A DNA stretch of 64,000 nt, from NCBI GenBank assembly GCA_965655095.1, contig OZ296648.1, forward strand, positions 115,010,001 to 115,074,000. Reading direction: 5' to 3'. The DNA comes from Haplodiscus bocki. Lineage: Eukaryota. Within the stretch, counting starts at the first letter, position 1. Each line of letters starts with the position of its first letter. The notes beneath the pieces are model-generated. The model searched no databases. It was not told where the DNA came from and saw only the letters and a program-made list of their open reading frames with translations. A program made the translations under genes and the position numbers. This document shows, piece by piece, positions 4,561 to 57,295 of the stretch.

Positions 4561-5766
4561 GTTCACCACTTTCAACTTTCTCAGCTGGTTTGCTACTAGT
4601 CCCAACTAACAAAGTTCGAAGACACATTTCCAACAGATTATAGCCGGTCAATTTTTTCTTAATTATAGGTTTTCTCCGTTACATAAATAAAGCAGGTGAG
4701 AAACAACTAAGTTTTGGAATTTTGCTTTCTAATGCCGTTTTAGCTGCGAGTGCGTTAAAAATCTTTGCTAAAAATATTTTCAACTTTTTCTGAAAAACAG
4801 AATTGGCTGCTTTTTCGAAATGTTTGATATTTTGCTTTCTAATCAACCCGATGCCTACGCATCCAACTTAAATCAATGCAAAATGATAAACTTTGAAAAT
4901 TTGCACGAAATTGAGAACATTTCGTCCAAAATAGTACTTTTGTTGCTCTAAAAGGCAACCAAAATACAGATAAAGTCATCAATTTTTTACAAAAATTTCT
5001 TTCTTTTGCACTCCAAATCAGCCTTTGAGCTTCAAATGCATCAATTAGGATAACACACATGTATCACTGTTTTAAAGAGGATCTGAATAACCCGTTCTCG
5101 CCAAAGAATCTATTTTAGGAAGTCAAGAGCGAACCTTCTAGTGCCCCAAGGCTCCTATGTTTTTCGCAAGACATCGTAGTCGGCATCAAATGTGCTTTTT
5201 GCGGATACACTAATGCGTTCTGATGCTTTTCAGTGGTATCACCTGTAGCTTCAAAAGATCGCGCCAAAAAAATTTCGGTTGATTGTGAAATGTTACCTCC
5301 CAAATCGATACGATATTCGGATTAAGCGTAGTGAACAATTATAAGTGTGAATTAAATTCACATTTCAATTTCAATTTCGCCAAATTCTTCCAAATTTGTT
5401 ATAGAATTCGTCAAGTATAGAAGTCTTTTTCAAATTGTCCTTCTTGGCAAAATAATTTCGGGTTTTTAAAAATAGATATTTTCAAGCTTCAAGGCAATTT
5501 TTGAACTCTATTCTCACATTTTTTCTGCTTAGCAGCATCACATCTCTCAAAAACGCAGACTTCCCATCATCACTGAGAGGTTTTTATTTGCTTGGCGTAA
5601 AATATCCCGGAGTTTGCTGGGCATCTTGCATTACTTCTTTTTAGACTCAATTATTTGAACGCCAGCTTAATTCTGGTGTAAAGAAAGATCAATTTAAAAC
5701 TTTTCAAAAGCAACATTAAATTCACTAGTTCTCTATAAATCAGGAAAACAATTCATGCTGTCCCGT

Positions 5767-6159
5767 CTACTTTTTGGAGTTTGCTTCTAAAGCGGCGACA
5801 CGTGAAATCTCTTTCAGATCACGAATTGACCCAATATCCAGGATATAAGCACCAATGGCAATCAATGAGCCCACAGCACACACTGAAGCTAGAGACCCAT
5901 AGGCTAAAGCTCTTCTAGCCAATAAAGTACCTTCTCTCTCGAGCTCAACAGTCGAAGTCAACGCAATGTCGCCCTTTAATCTCTTTTTTGCCCTTGAAAA
6001 ACCTGTTAAAAACCCAGCTCCGAGACCAACAGCTCCAATGCCAGTGAAAATCAATCCGGTAACAATCCCACTTTTATTGTTCAAACTCCGCAAGCCAGTG
6101 GTAACATTTGTATCTCCTGCTGATTCATTTGGACAACTTAATTTATTCACATTTTCCAT
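5767..6159 (-). CDS. TMEM242: Transmembrane protein 242 (mitochondrial ATP synthase c-ring assembly factor)
   Basis: Intronless 130-aa ORF with two TM segments. GFLTGFSRAKK and EREGTLLARRALAYGSLASVCAVG match the family pattern GFxxxxxxAKK...ESGxxLAxRALxWGSL. Confidence 0.85.
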   Translation of the reverse strand: MENVNKLSCPNESAGDTNVTTGLRSLNNKSGIVTGLIFTGIGAVGLGAGFLTGFSRAKKRLKGDIALTSTVELEREGTLLARRALAYGSLASVCAVGSLIAIGAYILDIGSIRDLKEISRVAALEANSKK

Positions 6160-6161
6160 AC

Positions 6162-6680
6162 CTAAAGTTGACTAACGAGTTTCTTAACTTTCGATAGAAT
6201 AATTTCGTTTGCACTGAAACAAGTTTCGGGGGTGAATGGCGAATGAACTTCGACGCAATTTAGAACTTTTATCACATCTGAGTTTGTTTGCACAACAAAA
6301 GGCAGATGCTGCTTTCCCAAAGATAACAACAACAATTTCTTTCGATTCTCCAAATCTGCGTTTAAAAACCCTTTACTGTGATCAGAATTTTTAGTTTCGC
6401 GTTTCCGAATTTCTTCCTGCAGACCGTGGAAATTCTTCTCAATCAAATTGCACCGATCAAAGTTTTTCGGATTCTTCACTTCATCGATTGCCAAGATTGA
6501 AGATGGAATAACAATTCTGGTTCCCGATGACGTGGCAACCAGAAGAGTCAAAGATTGAGGATCGACTAAGGCAATTATTCCAACAGAGGAAGGCAGTTTG
6601 TGCAAATGTTGAATCTCCACCAACTTCCCGACAAACTTGAGAACGTCCGAAAAAGAGTATTCCAAAATTGTTTCGTTCAT
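6162..6680 (-). CDS. GEMIN6: Gem-associated protein 6 (SMN complex; Sm-like N-terminus plus AD domain)
   Basis: Intronless 172-aa ORF. It has the Sm-like VDPQSLTLLV and the C-terminal DLENRKK...HLPF...VHSPFTPETCFSANEIILSKVKKLV, matching Gemin6 DLEERK...HIP...IDPPYGPENCSSSNEIILSRV. Confidence 0.85.
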   Translation of the reverse strand: MNETILEYSFSDVLKFVGKLVEIQHLHKLPSSVGIIALVDPQSLTLLVATSSGTRIVIPSSILAIDEVKNPKNFDRCNLIEKNFHGLQEEIRKRETKNSDHSKGFLNADLENRKKLLLLSLGKQHLPFVVQTNSDVIKVLNCVEVHSPFTPETCFSANEIILSKVKKLVSQL

Positions 6681-6819
6681 TGGCCGGACAAAGTAGAAGG
6701 GATTTTAAACATTACAGAAAATTTCAAGAGCAAATAAGCATCTGAAAGATAGGATGGGGTGAAGCGATTAGATTTCACAGAAAAGCTTTCCTTCTTTTTA
6801 CGCAACTAAACTAATATGA

Positions 6820-7210
6820 CACAGAGGTGAAGCGGAACTTCGCAACAAATTCTGACTTTTCAGCTGAGATTACGGAACCCAAAAAACATTTGAAACCATT
6901 ATCAGACACATGATTGACACTTTATAATTATTACACCAACTGTCAATCAAAAGTTAGTTCGAAAGAGTCGAATTGAGACATACGTGTCACACTGTATTTT
7001 GCTTGGAAAGTTGATCTGTCGACCATGTCTTTTCAAGTGACGCAAAATTGCAGTCCAATGTTTAAGAGACCCGAAGGCGAACAAATACCTGCTATATTGT
7101 CTTGTAAGCAAAACACTGATATGCCAAATATGACCATTAAAACACTGCTGTACAGCAAGGTCTACTGGTGCAATAATCTAGCCGTTAACGCATTTGTTCG
7201 ACCCTTAATG
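6820..7210 (-). mobile_element. Helentron-like non-autonomous element, family B, partial
   Basis: Begins with the hairpin GTGAAGCGGAACTTCGC. Shares the body (CATTTGAAACCAT..CAGCTGTCAATCAA) with copies at 11225 and 32845. Confidence 0.6.
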
Positions 7211-11224: not shown

Positions 11225-12020
11225 AAGCGGAACTTCGCAACAAATTTGTCAGTAAAAATTACAGTTCGCGAAAGACATTTGAAACCATGATCGCAGATGT
11301 GATTGACACTTTTAGAAATAAGGCACCAGCTGTCAATCAAGAGTTTGTTCGAAAAGGTCAAATTGAGACAAGTGCCTGTAACAGAGTATCACTCAAACAT
11401 TTGATGTCAATCATCTCTTTATAGATTACACCATTTTGCCGCCCCATATTGAAGCAGTTTGCACAGTTAAAAACATGAAAATGAACAAGAATCTGCTGAA
11501 AAGAAGTCATTTTTGACCATTTACACAATATGTTTAGACTCTCTGATGACGCCAAGTTTTGAACATGATAGAAAAAAGCCGAGCATAAGCTGGATTCAAA
11601 AGTTTCTTCCTTTCAGTCAGAATGTGTCAAAACAGATCGATTTTCGCGAAAAAACATATCGAAAAGTTGTCACACCGCAACCAAAATTTAGTATGTAGTA
11701 GACTCGAGACTTGTAACGTTTTTGCAAAAATCAGAAAGATCTGTCAAATAGGTGACGAGATATTGCGCTTTGAAAAAGATTTCGACTTGAAAATGTAACA
11801 GAAAAATTGCCGCTGAATTTTCCACTGTTGGCGTCTAAAAATGGTTCGCTTCGCTTTCCTAAAAGACAAGCGCTTTTTAGAACGCGAAAATGGAAACGTA
11901 CGTTGAAACTAGAGCTCTAGACTCTCAGATGGCGTAAAAAATGGAAATTTCGGACAGGATAAAAAAACTCAGCAAATGCCGGTTTCAATACATAATCTTC
12001 TTTTCAGTCAGAATGTTTAG
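11225..12020 (-). mobile_element. Helentron-like non-autonomous element, family B
   Basis: GCGGAACTTCGC hairpin remnant and shared body. The terminal motif TTCAGTCAGAATGT occurs twice (~11612, ~12003). Confidence 0.6.
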
Positions 12021-17096: not shown

Positions 17097-19101
17097 CAAT
17101 GGTGCCACTCGTAGGGAAATTCCCCTACAGAAAGGAAATTTAGCTATTTGTAGGTTGTAGGGGATACCTACGGGGAAAACTGTAAAATGTAGGTGGATTG
17201 TAGGGGGAAGGAAATATCTTTTTGAAAAGAGAATGTCTGTTCTCATTTTCTGCCAAAATACTCTTTTCCTGTGTTCTGACTATGTTACAGGTTATTGTAA
17301 CAAAATCTTTTATTTGGCTCATTTTCTGACCATATAAGGCAAAAGACGATTAACATGCCGTGAGTCATCATTATTTAGAAAATAAAAACAAATCGCGTGC
17401 GCTGATTGGTCAAGAGCTGTGCAAACACAGTAAACACATCTTTTATTTCTTAACTGTTGCGTCACTTGCATCCTACACTACAAGTTAATTTATTATATAT
17501 AGTCCAGGTGTTCCAAGTTTTTTCACTAAACTGTAGAGGGTAGCAATACTTTGAGCGGCAGTTAATCATGCCAAAAATCAACGAAAAAAAACTATCGCTG
17601 TCAAAAACATAGCAAAGAATGGGAGAAAGAAAGTTGGGCAAGTGATTGGCTGTCTGTTTCCAAACGTATACCTGGCAAAGCTTATTGTTCGCTCTGCGAC
17701 AAAGATCTTGTTGCTGGAAAATCAGAATTGATGGGCCATGCAAAATCGTCCAATCACATTCGTCAAAGCAAGAGTTCGGCAGAATGTTCCAGCATGAGAG
17801 CATTTCTAAATACAACCAAGGCATCCACAATCCAAGCCGAATTGAACACCGTTGCCTTAATTGCCAGGAAGAACACATCTTTCAATGTGCTCGACCAGCT
17901 TCTATCAACGTTGCACTACAGATTACGTCTTACGAGAATTAACTGGCTTAAACAAACTGTTCCAGTCAGACAAATTCAAGTTGCACCGATTGCTGCCTGA
18001 GGTTGAACGTGTCATTCGCATGTTTTCTCAAAACTTTATGATAAAGCCAAACAGATACATAGAATTTGCCAAGATCAACGTTGATGACGAATCAAAATGG
18101 TTCTCCATTAATGAAGTGTATCCTGCCTTCGCTGCTGCTGAGACTTTGGCAAATATGAGGCCGCATGAAAATACGTTGCCGCAACTGGTACAAGGTGGCA
18201 ATTCGCCAGATGCAGAAGCGTATTGATCTGCCTCGTCCAATCTTGGAAGCCTTCGTCGATGTTGACCACGTAGCCATAGTAAAGGGAAAGGCTGATGTGA
18301 AATCTGGTGGAGTATTGGCTTCCAAACTTCCAAGGCGACTTTCCCAATGCTGTGGTGTGCAAACCATCGACCGCCAGTGGCGTTCCCTGTTGGTAGATGA
18401 AGACGTAAAGAAGGGTGGCTGGGAAACCAGACAGTCACATGATTTCTGGAAAGCCATGGCAGACATAGAGCCATACAAGGAGTTGGCCACTTTTGTGCCA
18501 GAAATCACAGCATTACCCCAGAGCACCGCAGTAGTGGAAAGAACTTTTTCAAAGTTGAACAATAACAAAACAAAATTGAGAAATGCCTTGGGTTTTTGTA
18601 CTATGGAAGCAATTGTGAAAGTGAGCGAAGAATTTCCGAGCAACTTCGATTCAAATAAACGTCTTCCCGAGCTACATTCAAAAGCAAGAGCCAGCTATAT
18701 GAGAAAGTACACTGAGCAAGAGCGTCAGACGGTTGAAGACAACTTTTGAAATTTTAATGACTTTTTATATATCTTTTAGACTTTTACCATGATGAAGTAC
18801 TTATGAAATATGAATGGATTGTGATTAATTGGATTATGTTCTATTTTGTGCCATATAAAGTAATTATAATTTGTATTTCTAGCCAATATATTACCCCAAT
18901 TAGATTGCTAATGAAAGCTTTTTTATGTGTTTATTTAATTGAACACAGTTCACTAGTCCAAACCGACGTAGGTATATAATAGGGGGATATGTTTTTGGTA
19001 GGGGAAAAGTAGGGGAAAAAGAGGAAAACAGGCGTAGGGGGAAGTAGGTGGAAAAAGAAATTTTAGTAGGGGAAATGTGCATAAGCAGAGTGGCAGCACT
19101 G
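17097..19101 (+). mobile_element. Internally deleted hAT DNA transposon
   Basis: Imperfect TIRs CAATGGTGCCACTC (17097-17110) and GAGTGGCAGCACTG (19088-19101). Flanks GCACAGAT/CAGCAGAT form a degenerate 8-bp TSD. GTAGGGG subterminal repeats are present. Confidence 0.85.
17568..18749 (+). pseudogene. hAT transposase remnant (N-terminal zinc finger and C-terminal dimerisation domain; catalytic core largely deleted)
   Basis: WLSVSKRIPGKAYCSLCDKDLVAGKSELMGHAKSSNH is a BED-like finger. LPQSTAVVERTFSKLNNNKTKLRNAL is the hATC motif. Frameshifts separate the pieces. Confidence 0.85.
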
Positions 19102-24687: not shown

Positions 24688-25532
24688 CTAAAGCAAACTT
24701 TCGTCAAAAAGATATTCAATTTTTTAATTCACGTATTTGACATCATAAAAATCATCGAATAAAAATATAGTAATCAAAAAATCTATAACAACATTGCATG
24801 GTGACCTAATCACAGAAGGCTGTGTCATCTTCAACTTGAGCCAAAGAAAATTGGTTTTCGCAAGCAGCAAACCTCTGCTAATAGTATTTGGCGCGCTGAT
24901 CTGACGTTCACTCTTAAATCATTTCTTCAAAATTCAGAAGAGTTCCTCAATGTATTTTCAAGTGCAATTCATGTCTTTTGGTAGGAAATAATTTCAATTC
25001 CTTTCATTTTCGAAAGTTTTCATGCACGTGACCATATTTAAAGAACAATATAAACTGAATTACAGGGAAATCATACTCAATCTGTCTTATTGTGCTTTCT
25101 GCCACCTGGCTGACACGAATCTCTGAATAAAGCAATACTTCATACTCATTAAGAACATTTCAGTTGAGATGCTCTTCATACGTATTGGCCAACCATTTAT
25201 AGCACGACAGGGGAGCTATATTTTATTCATACACTCACTCTTAATGTCCAATGGTGTTCGAAGTTTGGTTACACTCCGTGATTTCAAATATGCACTGCGG
25301 AATTAACAACAATAAGAGCATACAACAGTCCATAATTACAACTTATATATCCACAAAAAATGATTAACGTTTCCTTGTTTCCACCTTTTCAATTCTGGAA
25401 TGCCTGAAAATATTTCGTTTCGGTATGAATAATTGAATCGAAAAACTTGAGAACCAAAATTATTCGGATTCTTAAAACCTGGTCAGCATTTAACACGTTC
25501 AAAGCGTTGCGAAAATTCACAGCTTCAGCAAT

Positions 25533-32840: not shown

Positions 32841-33396
32841 AAACATAGAGGCGAAGCGGAACTTCGCATCTACACATTCTGTTTTGTCATGAGATCACGG
32901 ATCTCGGTAGACATTTGAAACCATGATCGGAGATGTAATCAACACTTTTAGAAATACTACACCAGCTGTCAATCAAGAGTTTCTTCCAAAAAGCCAAAAA
33001 AAGTCAAAGGGTCGCATATTCGAAAAAGAAAAATCTCAACCATGTCTTTTCAGCTTACGCCATTTTGCTGCCAATATTTAAGAAGTTTGCACAGTAAACA
33101 AGCTGAAAACGAACAAATACCTGCCACAGTGTGATATTGACAAATTGATAAGTCAGTCATGTCTTGTCAGGTTACGCCATTTTGCTGCCCCGTGCTCAAG
33201 AGGTTTGCACAGTATACAACGCTATAAGTAACAAGTACCTGCCAAAAAGAGGCCATTTTGACGGTTTACACTAAATGACTAGACTCCCTGAAGACGTCTA
33301 AAAATGCAAGTTGTAGACAGGATTAAAAAACTAAACATTAGCCGGTTTCCGACACACCAATACACATTATTCCTTTCAAGTCAGAATGTGTAAAAA
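32841..33396 (-). mobile_element. Complete Helentron-like non-autonomous element, family B (DINE-1-like architecture)
   Basis: Hairpin GCGAAG-CGGAA-CTTCGC (32851-32867). Perfect 11-bp subTIRs TACACATTCTG (32871-32881) / CAGAATGTGTA (33382-33392), plus an extra partial inverted copy TACACATT at 33361. A/T-run junctions, no TSD. Confidence 0.8.
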
Positions 33397-33569
33397 CGAT
33401 TTTCTAAATTGAAGATTTTTGAGAAAATTGAGGTAGAAAAAAATTGCGATATCAAATACTACCTTGTGAAAAGTTTATTCCTCGGTTGCAATAATTTTGG
33501 TCCTTTCAAGTTAGTCCGCATATAACTCATAGAAGTTTAGAGTGAATCATAAACATTAATTCTCTTTAG

Positions 33570-34195
33570 GCATGGACACGATTAGCATTCGTTCCAGTCA
33601 ACAAACAATCCAACAAGAATCTGCAAATGAAGCCTACAAACATCCAAAACTGCGAGCAGTGAATCACACACAAGAAAGTTTCATAAAGTCCCGATTACAC
33701 AAAGAACAATTTGGATTCATGTTCGTGAGAAACCCTTTACACAGAATTCTATCGAGATACATAGATCGGAAAGTTGGAAATCAATGGCACTTTAATTTAG
33801 AAACTAATTTACCTGAATTTTTGCAGCACATTTCATCGCAAGACTACCCACAAAGCCCCGATTCTCAATTGTTCTTCTGCGATCCATGTCTTTTGAAAAT
33901 ATCGTTTTTGGGAAAATGGGAGACAGTGAAAAATGATTTGGCCTACCTCGTGAAAAATGTCACAGCTCTGGGCAAAGTGATGGCATACAATGCGAAGAGG
34001 AATCCCTCAGAGGAATACTTGGTAGGACAGCAGTTCCTTACTCACAGAAGAATGCTTAGACAACACATACCACGCAAGCTGTTGTTGCAGATACTTTGGA
34101 CGTTCAGACTAGAATATCTCGTTTTTGGTTATGACCCTTTTGACGATTTGGAGCTAAGATTGAATTCTTCGTCTCAACACAATGCTTTACATTAG
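33570..34195 (+). CDS. Carbohydrate sulfotransferase (CHST11-like), last exon
   Basis: Acceptor TCTCTTTAG|GC at 33569/33570. Motifs are SANEAY..LRAVN, the 3'-PB motif FMFVRNPLHRILSRY, CDPC, FLGKWET and FGY. It joins exon 1 in frame (344 aa). Confidence 0.8.
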
Positions 34196-57000: not shown

Positions 57001-57295
57001 GTCCTCACCCTCGATTATTGTACTGGCTGGTCCATTCTTCGAGATGTGGCCGGGACTTTCAGGGTACACTAGGCGAGGACATTGGCGTTCTAAGCATTCA
57101 ATACATGTCCAGTTTTGATTTTCAAGGTTTTTGATTTCTTCGGCTGTCAGGTTGGTGCATTTTTTGTGGAACCAATACTCGCAGGTTTTGCATAAAATGG
57201 ACCATTGTCTCTTGACTTATTGCAAGCTCCACACGACCATGTGTTCATCATGTCATTTCATACCGGAAACTATTTATTAAGTTTATCACAACATT
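54025..57295 (-). mobile_element. Full-length CRE-clade non-LTR retrotransposon (PHD-RT-zinc knuckle-RLE), frameshifted
   Basis: RT motifs GVRPIGVGEVLQR, IDATNAFN, GTTQANPLAM and WYSDDG. CCHC ..HALHCPK..RHNEI. RLE RLDIKANGLWG..FFDVKIFNP..KLKYEQR. N-terminal PHD at ~57100-57240. A7 tail at 54025-54031. TSD copies at 54002-54024 and 57296-57317 (exact core TTTAAGTCTGGAC). Confidence 0.92.

What the first reader, a model, noticed from the sequence alone, without database searches (positions are those of the whole stretch)
5767..6745. GEMIN6-TMEM242 zero-spacer gene pair: the upstream stop codon is the downstream splice acceptor
Seen: on the minus strand the junction reads ...AGT CAA CTT TAG GT ATG GAA. 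The GEMIN6 stop TAG (6164-6162) is separated from the TMEM242 ATG (6159) by 2 nt. There is no room for a GEMIN6 3'UTR/poly(A) signal or a TMEM242 promoter, and the frames differ, so readthrough would not give a fusion. CTTTAG|G is also a canonical 3' splice site, identical to the TTTAG|G acceptors at 24688 and 33569. A second acceptor (CTATCTTTCAG, AG at 6743-6742, with a CTAAT branch-like motif upstream) precedes GEMIN6. Known: animal operons are resolved by SL trans-splicing, and spacer-less operons occur in Ciona and as SL1-type operons in C. elegans. Inference: two unrelated housekeeping genes (snRNP assembly; mitochondrial ATP synthase assembly) come from one precursor. Possible routes are SL trans-splicing at the stop-codon AG, alternative acceptor choice from a shared 5' exon, or termination-reinitiation. 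Splicing at this AG would cut exactly at the GEMIN6 stop, making the two products potentially mutually exclusive.
Basis: partly seen in the sequence, partly recalled or inferred. Interest (0 to 1): 0.82.

Follow-up and report, generated by a model that had tools for sequence, protein, structure and literature searches.

The report
Conserved acoel Gemin6–TMEM242 two-gene message
Two unrelated housekeeping genes (Gemin6 and TMEM242) touch end to start in this acoel worm and in five related genomes, and the sequence suggests one shared messenger RNA whose second protein is made by ribosomes that skip the first start codon, not by splicing at the stop codon.

Summary
On the minus strand a 172-codon Gemin6 ORF (6680-6162, stop TAG 6164-6162) is followed after 2 nt by a 130-codon TMEM242/DUF1358 ORF (6159-5767). 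Independent DNA contigs confirm the junction. Both genes are single copy in the 1.5 Gb genome.

The genome is an acoel. It carries a tandem array of SL RNA + 5S rRNA genes, and the 29-nt leader matches the published Symsagittifera roscoffensis spliced leader.

The adjacency is conserved in six acoel-type genomes, including Convolutriloba macropyga. The start of TMEM242 lies +2, +4, +12, -4, -4 and -29 nt from the end of the Gemin6 stop, and the frame relation varies.

The stop-codon CTTTAG|G acceptor is specific to this genome. Relatives use TAA or TGA and have no pyrimidine-rich AG at the junction.

Four other features are conserved:
- a strong T(T/C)TCAG|A acceptor 10-61 nt before the Gemin6 ATG
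- a short uORF whose TGA overlaps the Gemin6 ATG (5 of 5 species)
- no internal Met in Gemin6 (6 of 6)
- a roughly four-fold lack of ATG triplets across Gemin6 (15 seen, 62 expected), all in weak context

Best reading: one dicistronic mRNA, with TMEM242 translated by leaky scanning or post-uORF reinitiation. No RNA data were available, so this is inferred.

The parts
6742..6761 (-). Pyrimidine-rich 3' splice site caccccatcctatctttcag (AG at 6743-6742). Probable SL trans-splice (or cis 5'UTR) acceptor that forms the 5' end of the mature message.
   Evidence: T(T/C)TCAG|A with pyrimidine fraction 0.78-0.83 in five species, 10-61 nt before the Gemin6 ATG. Between-species DNA homology starts here. 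The SL RNA gene exists in this genome.
6724..6741 (-). uORF1 (ATG CTT ATT TGC TCT TGA), which starts at the first base of the exon.
   Evidence: Also present in L002/L003 (9 codons), absent in L001. Weak start context.
6677..6712 (-). uORF2, 11 codons. Its TGA stop (6679-6677) overlaps the Gemin6 ATG (6680-6678) as ATGA.
   Evidence: a uORF ending in a TGA that overlaps the Gemin6 ATG is present in all five species that have upstream sequence (10-11 codons in window, L001, L002; 2 codons in L096, L098). The -3 position is a purine.
6162..6680 (-). Gemin6 CDS (172 codons, stop TAG 6164-6162). It has no internal Met and only two internal ATG triplets (6484 and 6277), which open 2- and 1-codon ORFs.
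6157..6164 (-). Junction TAG GT ATG: Gemin6 stop, 2-nt spacer, TMEM242 start in strong context (g at -3, G at +4). CTTTAG|G also looks like an acceptor.
   Evidence: and 15 (DNA contigs confirm it).
5767..6159 (-). TMEM242 / DUF1358 CDS (130 codons, two hydrophobic helices). ATG 6159 is its only Met.
6142..6147 (-). AATAAA hexamer inside TMEM242 codons 5-6, a possible but unconserved poly(A) signal for a Gemin6-only mRNA.
   Evidence: Not present at the matching place in L001, L096 or L098.
5583..5588 (-). AATAAA 179 nt after the TMEM242 stop, the likely poly(A) signal of the shared message (AATAAT is also present at 5655-5650).
   Evidence: by inspection only.

Best explanation
Gemin6 and TMEM242 form a dicistronic gene that is conserved across acoels. 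One primary transcript is processed at the conserved TTTCAG|A acceptor 61 nt before the Gemin6 ATG, most likely by addition of the acoel spliced leader. It is polyadenylated after TMEM242, giving a mature mRNA with the order SL, two short uORFs, Gemin6, TMEM242.

Gemin6 is translated by ribosomes that start at its own AUG, which has a weak context in this species. TMEM242 is translated by 40S subunits that miss that AUG. They do so either by leaking past it, or by first translating the short uORF whose UGA lies on top of the Gemin6 AUG and then resuming scanning. Gemin6 has no internal Met and almost no AUG triplets, and the few it has are in poor context and open ORFs of 1-26 codons. These subunits can therefore travel about 520 nt and start at the first well-placed AUG, that of TMEM242.

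Shown here: the anatomy, its conservation in six genomes, the AUG scarcity, the uORF overlap and the presence of the SL system. Inferred: the single mature mRNA, use of the SL at 6742, and the translation route.
For: - Adjacency is conserved in six genomes, with spacers of +2, +4, +12, -4, -4 and -29 nt.
- In L002/L003 the first TMEM242 coding exon is physically continuous with Gemin6 and is followed by a 0.65-1.1 kb intron.
- Both genes are single copy in the genome.
- Gemin6 has no internal Met in any of the six orthologues, although identity falls to 36-44%.
- Internal ATG counts are 2, 4, 3, 4, 0, 2 = 15, against 62 expected from base shuffles (0 of 5000 shuffles as low) and 26.8 from codon-order shuffles (P 0.0017).
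- All 15 residual ATGs lack both a -3 purine and a +4 G.
- Controls have normal ATG density: TMEM242 1.0-2.7 per 100 nt, anamorsin and the sulfotransferase gene 1.9, against 0.39 in window Gemin6.
- Start contexts: Gemin6 is ccaATGa in three species, and TMEM242 has g at -3 and G at +4 in those same three.
- A uORF stop overlaps the Gemin6 ATG in 5 of 5 species.
- A 5' acceptor is conserved in five species.
- SL RNA + 5S tandem array: more than 700 leader+GT hits, donor AG|GTAAGT, 5S at 117.8 bits, SL RNA-like fold with z -4.2.
- The leader is identical to the SL published for S. roscoffensis, where 30.2% of genes are trans-spliced (PMC9911081).
Against: - No RNA evidence of any kind. The only runs that hold the stretch are genomic.
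- Against the strictest null (synonymous-codon shuffles) the off-frame ATG deficit is not significant overall: 15 against 18.1, P 0.14, and significant only in the window species and L098. Much of the deficit therefore sits in the amino-acid sequence, and protein constraints could contribute.
- Whether a Met-free Gemin6 is unusual among animals was not tested.
- In L096, L098 and L101 the Gemin6 AUG has a -3 purine, so simple leaky scanning is less obvious there.
- Scanning alone does not explain why the stop and start stay within a few nucleotides.
- CTTTAG|G at the junction resembles real acceptors in the same window.
Confidence: 0.58

Rival explanations
1. One reading: the shared precursor is also trans-spliced at the stop-codon AG (CTTTAG|GT, 6163-6162). 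This gives a monocistronic SL-GU-AUG TMEM242 mRNA at the cost of the Gemin6 message, so the two products exclude each other on any one precursor molecule.
For: The organism has SL trans-splicing. YTTTAG|G is a real acceptor type in this window, including one 2 nt before an ATG at 33569. L096 and L098 have TTAG|A and CTAG|A 4 nt before the TMEM242 ATG.
Against: The acceptor is not conserved. L002 has no AG within 10 nt of the ATG. Junction AGs have a pyrimidine fraction of 0.33-0.61, against 0.78-0.83 at the 5' acceptors. In L101 the ATG lies inside Gemin6. An SL site next to the TMEM242 AUG gives no reason for an ATG-poor, Met-free Gemin6 or for the conserved uORF overlap. No SL-capped retrocopy of either gene exists that could show a splice site.
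Confidence: 0.17
2. Termination-reinitiation coupling: ribosomes that finish Gemin6 stay on the mRNA and restart at the adjacent or overlapping TMEM242 AUG. This would work as at the ATGA or UAAUG junctions of calicivirus VP1/VP2 and influenza B M1/BM2. The uORF-to-Gemin6 ATGA overlap could work in the same way.
For: The stop and start are held within -4 to +12 nt in five of six genomes, with exact ATGA overlaps in L096 and L098. The same ATGA overlap occurs between the uORF and Gemin6 in five species. Proximity is what this mechanism needs, and scanning does not need it.
Against: From established knowledge, reinitiation after a 172-180 codon ORF is normally very inefficient in eukaryotes without a dedicated upstream element, and none was looked for here. 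The mechanism does not predict ATG scarcity across Gemin6. In L101 the start lies 17-29 nt upstream of the stop.
Confidence: 0.15
3. Separate TMEM242 transcripts start from a promoter inside or upstream of the Gemin6 CDS, and the tight packing is only a gene overlap.
For: Nothing direct. An ATG-poor Gemin6 CDS would also suit a long TMEM242 5'UTR that overlaps it.
Against: The genome is 1.5 Gb with a 15 kb gap to the next gene, so there is no pressure to compact, yet the abutment is kept in six genomes. The ATG-poor zone covers the whole Gemin6 CDS, so scanning would have to begin at or before its start. That is what the dicistronic mRNA already provides.
Confidence: 0.07

Closest known systems
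Eukaryotic cellular dicistronic mRNAs read by leaky scanning or reinitiation (for example Drosophila dicistronic genes, mammalian MOCS2A/B and SNURF-SNRPN, polycistronic mRNAs of green algae and fungi). Named from my own knowledge, not checked in papers here.
   Same: Two unrelated conserved ORFs sit on one transcription unit with no room for separate processing signals. The upstream cistron is poor in AUGs, and in three species the upstream start context is weak and the downstream one strong. The arrangement is conserved across species.
   Different: This is a new gene pair in a new clade (Acoela), in an organism that also has SL trans-splicing. A conserved uORF ends on top of the first cistron's AUG. 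The stop and start are held within a few nucleotides, including ATGA overlaps.
SL-resolved operons without a spacer (C. elegans SL1-type operons, Ciona operons).
   Same: An SL RNA system is present. The genes are co-oriented and unrelated, with essentially no intercistronic DNA. The SL-type acceptor lies in front of the first gene.
   Different: In those operons the upstream gene keeps its own 3'UTR and poly(A) signal before the downstream acceptor. Here the stop codon is 2 nt from, or overlaps, the next ATG. The junction acceptor is not conserved, and the upstream CDS carries a scanning signature.
Viral termination-reinitiation junctions (calicivirus VP1/VP2 ATGA, influenza B M1/BM2 UAAUG).
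   Same: ATGA stop/start overlap in two acoel species, and spacing of no more than 12 nt in three others.
   Different: These are cellular genes. No TURBS-like 18S-complementary element was sought or found. ATG depletion of the upstream ORF is not a feature of that mechanism.

Membership tests
Gemin6 (SMN complex subunit; Pfam PF20417 Gemin6_C) | Match to the Gemin6_C model above Pfam's gathering score | tested here: met
   45.8 bits against a cut-off of 33.4, E 4.8e-12. The orthologues in L001, L002, L096, L098 and L101 carry the same precomputed Pfam hit.
Gemin6 (SMN complex subunit; Pfam PF20417 Gemin6_C) | Sm-like fold and pairing with Gemin7 | not tested
   No structure was predicted. Sequence and profile searches of PDB chains found no Gemin6 chain.
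TMEM242 (Pfam PF07096 DUF1358) | Match to DUF1358 above the gathering score, and two hydrophobic helices | tested here: met
   32.5 bits against 23.4. The segments GIVTGLIFTGIGAVGLGAGFLTGF and YGSLASVCAVGSLIAIGAYIL are conserved in the alignment. The profile search retrieves DUF1358 proteins of other animals.
SL trans-spliced operon | The organism has an SL RNA gene with leader, GT donor and SL RNA-like fold | tested here: met
   tandem SL RNA + 5S units on G000:C9 from 72.47 Mb, donor AG|GTAAGT. The leader equals the published S. roscoffensis SL.
SL trans-spliced operon | A conserved trans-splice acceptor between the cistrons | tested here: not met
   only the window has YTTTAG|G. Relatives have purine-rich AGs or none within 10 nt, and ATGA overlaps or an internal ATG.
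SL trans-spliced operon | The upstream gene has its own 3' end and poly(A) signal before the downstream acceptor | tested here: not met
   the spacer is +2 nt here and -29 to +12 nt in relatives, which leaves no room.
SL trans-spliced operon | Mature monocistronic, SL-capped mRNA of the downstream gene | not testable with these tools
   No RNA run holds the stretch.
Dicistronic mRNA read by leaky scanning or reinitiation | Scarcity of AUG in the upstream cistron | tested here: met
   15 against 62 (base shuffles, 0 of 5000) and 26.8 (codon-order shuffles, P 0.0017). It is not significant against synonymous shuffles (P 0.14). No internal Met in 6 of 6.
Dicistronic mRNA read by leaky scanning or reinitiation | Weak upstream and strong downstream start context | tested here: inconclusive
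   met in window, L001 and L002. In L096, L098 and L101 both starts are 'adequate'.
Dicistronic mRNA read by leaky scanning or reinitiation | One mature mRNA carrying both ORFs | not testable with these tools
   Inferred from the lack of room for processing signals. No RNA data are available.
Termination-reinitiation junction | Stop and restart codons overlapping or within a few nucleotides | tested here: met
   -4, -4, +2, +4, +12 nt; L101 is -29 or -17.
Termination-reinitiation junction | Upstream element that tethers the 40S subunit (TURBS-like) | not tested
   No 18S rRNA sequence of this organism was retrieved and no complementarity scan was run.

The most novel reading that the evidence does not exclude
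Acoels may use stop/start overlaps as a cellular translational coupling device. In this reading a uORF-AUGA-Gemin6-AUGA-TMEM242 chain (exact in Convolutriloba macropyga and L098, relaxed to +2 nt here) lets the uORF set how ribosomes are shared between an snRNP-assembly factor and a mitochondrial ATP-synthase assembly factor. In this species the stop-codon CTTTAG|G may add an SL-dependent switch on top. That would be a cellular, conserved analogue of viral termination-reinitiation after a long ORF.
Probability: 0.15. Interest if true: 0.72.

Novelty: new member of a known kind. Interest (0 to 1): 0.48.

Why it matters
SL trans-splicing in acoels was reported only recently, and I found no paper on acoel operons or dicistronic genes in the library searched. 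This locus is a clean, deeply conserved case in which a gene pair in an SL-using animal appears not to be resolved by the SL. It seems to be read as a true dicistronic mRNA with a uORF placed on the first start codon.

It offers a compact, testable system for how scanning, uORFs and stop/start proximity share ribosomes between two essential single-copy genes.

It also warns annotators of acoel genomes that an acceptor-like AG in front of an ATG is not enough to call an operon boundary.

Tried and rejected
- RNA evidence: the look-up of sequencing runs returned four runs of one study, and all proved to be genomic contigs when laid on the window. There are no splice joints, leaders or ends at 6161 or 6741 to report.
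- Readthrough or frameshift fusion was rejected. The frame offset between the ORFs is 2, 0, 1, 2, 2 and 1 in the six genomes, and L001 has a second in-frame stop.
- The calanoid copepod spliced leader is absent from the genome. An early guess of Arthropoda, based on atlas neighbours of anamorsin, was wrong.
- At first I read the 29-mer as a 3' tail of repeats. The ORF direction and the SL RNA array showed it is the leader at the 5' ends of LINEs.
- PDB sequence and profile searches did not reach any Gemin6 chain.
- The metagenome-contig scan with the Gemin6 profile found nothing.
- Paper searches for Gemin6 with 'bicistronic' or with TMEM242 gave nothing relevant.
- TMEM242 loci of two non-acoel animals (L099, L100) show multi-exon genes with no Gemin6 neighbour within 5 kb. 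I did not analyse those loci further.
- I could not fix the exact donor/acceptor pair of the L002 TMEM242 intron. Two in-frame pairs are possible by inspection.

Full report
**1. The observation**

Reading the minus strand and listing ORFs confirms the finding at its coordinates.
- A 172-codon ORF runs 6680-6162 and ends in TAG at 6164-6162.
- Two bases follow (GT), then ATG at 6159 opens a 130-codon ORF that runs to 5767.
- Pfam places the first ORF in Gemin6_C (45.8 bits, cut-off 33.4) and the second in DUF1358, the TMEM242 family (32.5 bits, cut-off 23.4).
- The upstream acceptor-like CTATCTTTCAG (AG at 6743-6742) is present.
- Contigs of three DNA runs from one sample cover 5000-6844 with no difference. 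A collapsed spacer is therefore unlikely.
- Both proteins are encoded only once in the 1.5 Gb genome.

**2. What organism this is, and whether it trans-splices**

Earlier first-stage notes on this genome mentioned a shared "leader" on LINEs. I fetched one such place and traced the shared sequence genome-wide.
- Homology between element copies stops exactly at the 29-mer.
- The LINE ORFs run away from the 29-mer, so it sits at the 5' ends of several LINE families.
- Searching for the leader followed by GT found more than 700 hits. Most lie in a tandem array on G000:C9 from 72.47 Mb, with a period of 1.7-2.6 kb.
- One unit reads ...GCCTAATTGTTGTGATAAACTTATTAAATAG|GTAAGT....
- The unit folds like an SL RNA, with a stem that holds the donor, a U-rich single strand and a 3' hairpin (z -4.2).
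- It is followed by a 5S rRNA gene (117.8 bits).
- The leader is letter for letter the spliced leader reported for the acoel Symsagittifera roscoffensis, where 30.2% of genes are trans-spliced (PMC9911081).

The window therefore comes from an acoel with a working SL system. It is probably not S. roscoffensis itself, because that species' public runs did not appear among the holders.

**3. Relatives**

The word search, the exhaustive profile search and contig look-ups found the same gene pair in five other genomes:

| Locus | Source | TMEM242 ATG relative to end of Gemin6 stop |
|---|---|---|
| Window | this genome | +2 nt (stop TAG) |
| L001 | a Logan contig | +12 nt (stop TAA) |
| L002/L003 | two contigs of one ENA assembly | +4 nt (stop TAA) |
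| L096/L097 | L097 is GCA_964194025.3, Convolutriloba macropyga (PMC13650328) | -4 nt (ATGA overlap, stop TGA) |
| L098 | another ENA assembly | -4 nt (ATGA overlap, stop TGA) |
| L101 | a metagenome scaffold | -29 nt, or -17 for the second in-frame ATG |

- Gemin6 identity to the window protein falls from 63% to 36% across this set.
- The relative reading frame of the two ORFs varies, which excludes a readthrough or frameshift fusion.
- In L002/L003 the first 12-20 codons of TMEM242 are continuous with Gemin6 and are then interrupted by an intron of 0.65-1.1 kb. The ATG at the junction is therefore the real start, and it belongs to the same exon as Gemin6.
- Anamorsin lies upstream on the same strand in L002, L003 and L096, at 0.95-2.7 kb. 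In the window it lies 15 kb upstream, with repeats and hAT remnants between.
- In two non-acoel animals TMEM242 is a multi-exon gene with no Gemin6 neighbour.

**4. Testing the "stop codon = acceptor" idea**

YTTTAG|G is a genuine acceptor form in this window, so the resemblance is fair. It is not conserved.
- L002 has no AG within 10 nt of the ATG.
- L001 has GGAG and TAAG in a purine-rich setting.
- L096 and L098 have TTAG and CTAG that arise from Leu-Glu codons.
- In L101 the ATG lies inside Gemin6.
- The pyrimidine fraction in front of these AGs is 0.33-0.61.
- In contrast, every species with upstream sequence has T(T/C)TCAG|A with a pyrimidine fraction of 0.78-0.83, placed 10-61 nt before the Gemin6 ATG. 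Between-species DNA similarity begins there.
- The published SL consensus ends ...ATAGA. Its last A fits the A that follows each of these acceptors.

The conserved processing site is the one in front of Gemin6, not the one at the junction.

**5. A scanning signature**

I listed every ATG from the exon start to the TMEM242 start.

- *No internal Met.* Gemin6 has no internal Met in any of the six species.
- *Few internal ATGs.* Internal ATG triplets number 2, 4, 3, 4, 0 and 2, in all 15. Expectations are:
  - 62 from base-composition shuffles (none of 5000 shuffles came below 37);
  - 26.8 from codon-order shuffles (P 0.0017);
  - 18.1 from synonymous-codon shuffles (P 0.14; significant alone only in the window species, P 0.008, and in L098, P 0.012).
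  Most of the deficit is thus written into the amino-acid sequence. Selection against AUG would produce this pattern, but protein constraints could contribute too.
- *Weak context.* All 15 residual ATGs lack both a -3 purine and a +4 G. They open ORFs of 1-26 codons that end well before the TMEM242 start.
- *Conserved tiny ORFs.* Two of them are conserved in the window, L001 and L002: ATG AAG TGA at 6484 (ATG AAT TGA in L002) and ATG TGA at 6277.
- *Controls.* ATG density per 100 nt is 1.0-2.7 in TMEM242 and 1.9 in both anamorsin and the sulfotransferase gene, against 0.39 in window Gemin6. A Nup62-like ORF is lower, at 0.74.
- *Start contexts.* In the window, L001 and L002 the Gemin6 start is ccaATGa (weak), and the TMEM242 start has g at -3 and G at +4 (strong).
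- *uORF overlap.* All five species with upstream sequence carry a uORF whose TGA overlaps the Gemin6 ATG as ATGA. It has 11 codons here (6712-6677), 10-11 in L001 and L002, and only 2 in L096 and L098.

**6. Mechanism**

The simplest account of all conserved features is one mature dicistronic mRNA. Its 5' end is made at 6742|6741, most likely by the SL, although a cis-spliced non-coding exon is not excluded. It is polyadenylated after TMEM242; an AATAAA lies at 5588-5583.
- Ribosomes that start at the Gemin6 AUG make Gemin6.
- Subunits that leak past it, or that translate the short uORF, terminate on top of the Gemin6 AUG and resume scanning, cross an almost AUG-free 520 nt and start at TMEM242.

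The very tight stop/start spacing is not required by this model. It keeps termination-reinitiation after Gemin6 alive as a rival or an added route. An extra SL acceptor at the TAG of this species remains possible. So does a Gemin6-only mRNA ending after the unconserved AATAAA at 6147-6142.

My odds are:

| Reading | Odds |
|---|---|
| Scanning-type dicistronic mRNA | 0.58 |
| Junction trans-splicing | 0.17 |
| Termination-reinitiation as the main route | 0.15 |
| Internal promoter | 0.07 |

**7. Comparison with known systems and novelty**

The locus works like the cellular dicistronic mRNAs known from insects, mammals, algae and fungi (named from my own knowledge). It fails two defining tests of an SL-resolved operon: there is no conserved intercistronic acceptor, and the upstream gene has no 3' end of its own.

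I found no paper on this gene pair or on acoel polycistrons. I class it as a new member of a known kind, with an unusual added feature: the uORF and the two cistrons are linked by ATGA overlaps in some species.

It is of moderate interest. It is a well-conserved, experimentally approachable case in a clade that matters for phylogeny, and it corrects the more exotic reading.

Noticed in passing
G000:C9:72472242-72670000 (for example L075:1490-1860): Large tandem array, with units of 1.7-2.6 kb, each holding an SL RNA gene (leader GCCTAATTGTTGTGATAAACTTATTAAATAG|GTAAGT) and a 5S rRNA gene. The leader is identical to the published Symsagittifera roscoffensis SL, which identifies the genome as an acoel. 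A second set of eight exact leader+GTG matches, about 10 kb apart, lies at C7:57.91-57.99 Mb.
   Followed up: yes
Window 57270-57294 (-); L036-L065 elsewhere in G000: More than 1,100 dispersed copies of the SL leader sit exactly at the 5' ends of several unrelated LINE families. Homology between copies stops at the leader, and the zinc-finger ORF1 and endonuclease ORFs run away from it. This fits retrotransposition of SL-trans-spliced LINE mRNAs, as other first-stage notes proposed. In some families the shared part extends to ...AAATAGTTTCAG.
   Followed up: partly
Window 6819-7067, also 11225-11370 and 32843-33083: A dispersed repeat of about 250 nt lies 75 nt upstream of the Gemin6 acceptor. 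K-mer depth in the DNA runs is about 260-500 times the single-copy level, and contigs break there.
   Followed up: partly
Window 24565-21960 (-): A Nup62-like ORF (Nsp1_C, 7e-26) and anamorsin (CIAPIN1) lie head to tail about 480 nt apart on the same strand as Gemin6-TMEM242. Anamorsin has TTTCAG 7 nt before its ATG. The anamorsin-Gemin6 linkage is conserved in L002, L003 and C. macropyga at 0.95-2.7 kb, but is stretched to 15 kb here by repeats and a hAT transposase remnant (18168-18749, +).
   Followed up: partly
L002:5584-6694 and L003 (matching place): Only this species has an intron (0.65-1.1 kb) after the first 12-20 codons of TMEM242. The obvious GAT|GTAAAA donor does not fit any AG acceptor in frame. 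Two other in-frame donor/acceptor pairs are possible. An AATAAA lies inside the intron about 100 nt after the Gemin6 stop.
   Followed up: partly
Window 33560-33575 (+): CTCTTTAG|GC ATG in front of a sulfotransferase-domain ORF: the same acceptor-2 nt-ATG layout as at the Gemin6/TMEM242 junction. The Pfam match lacks the first 45 profile positions, so this may be an internal exon rather than a start.
   Followed up: no
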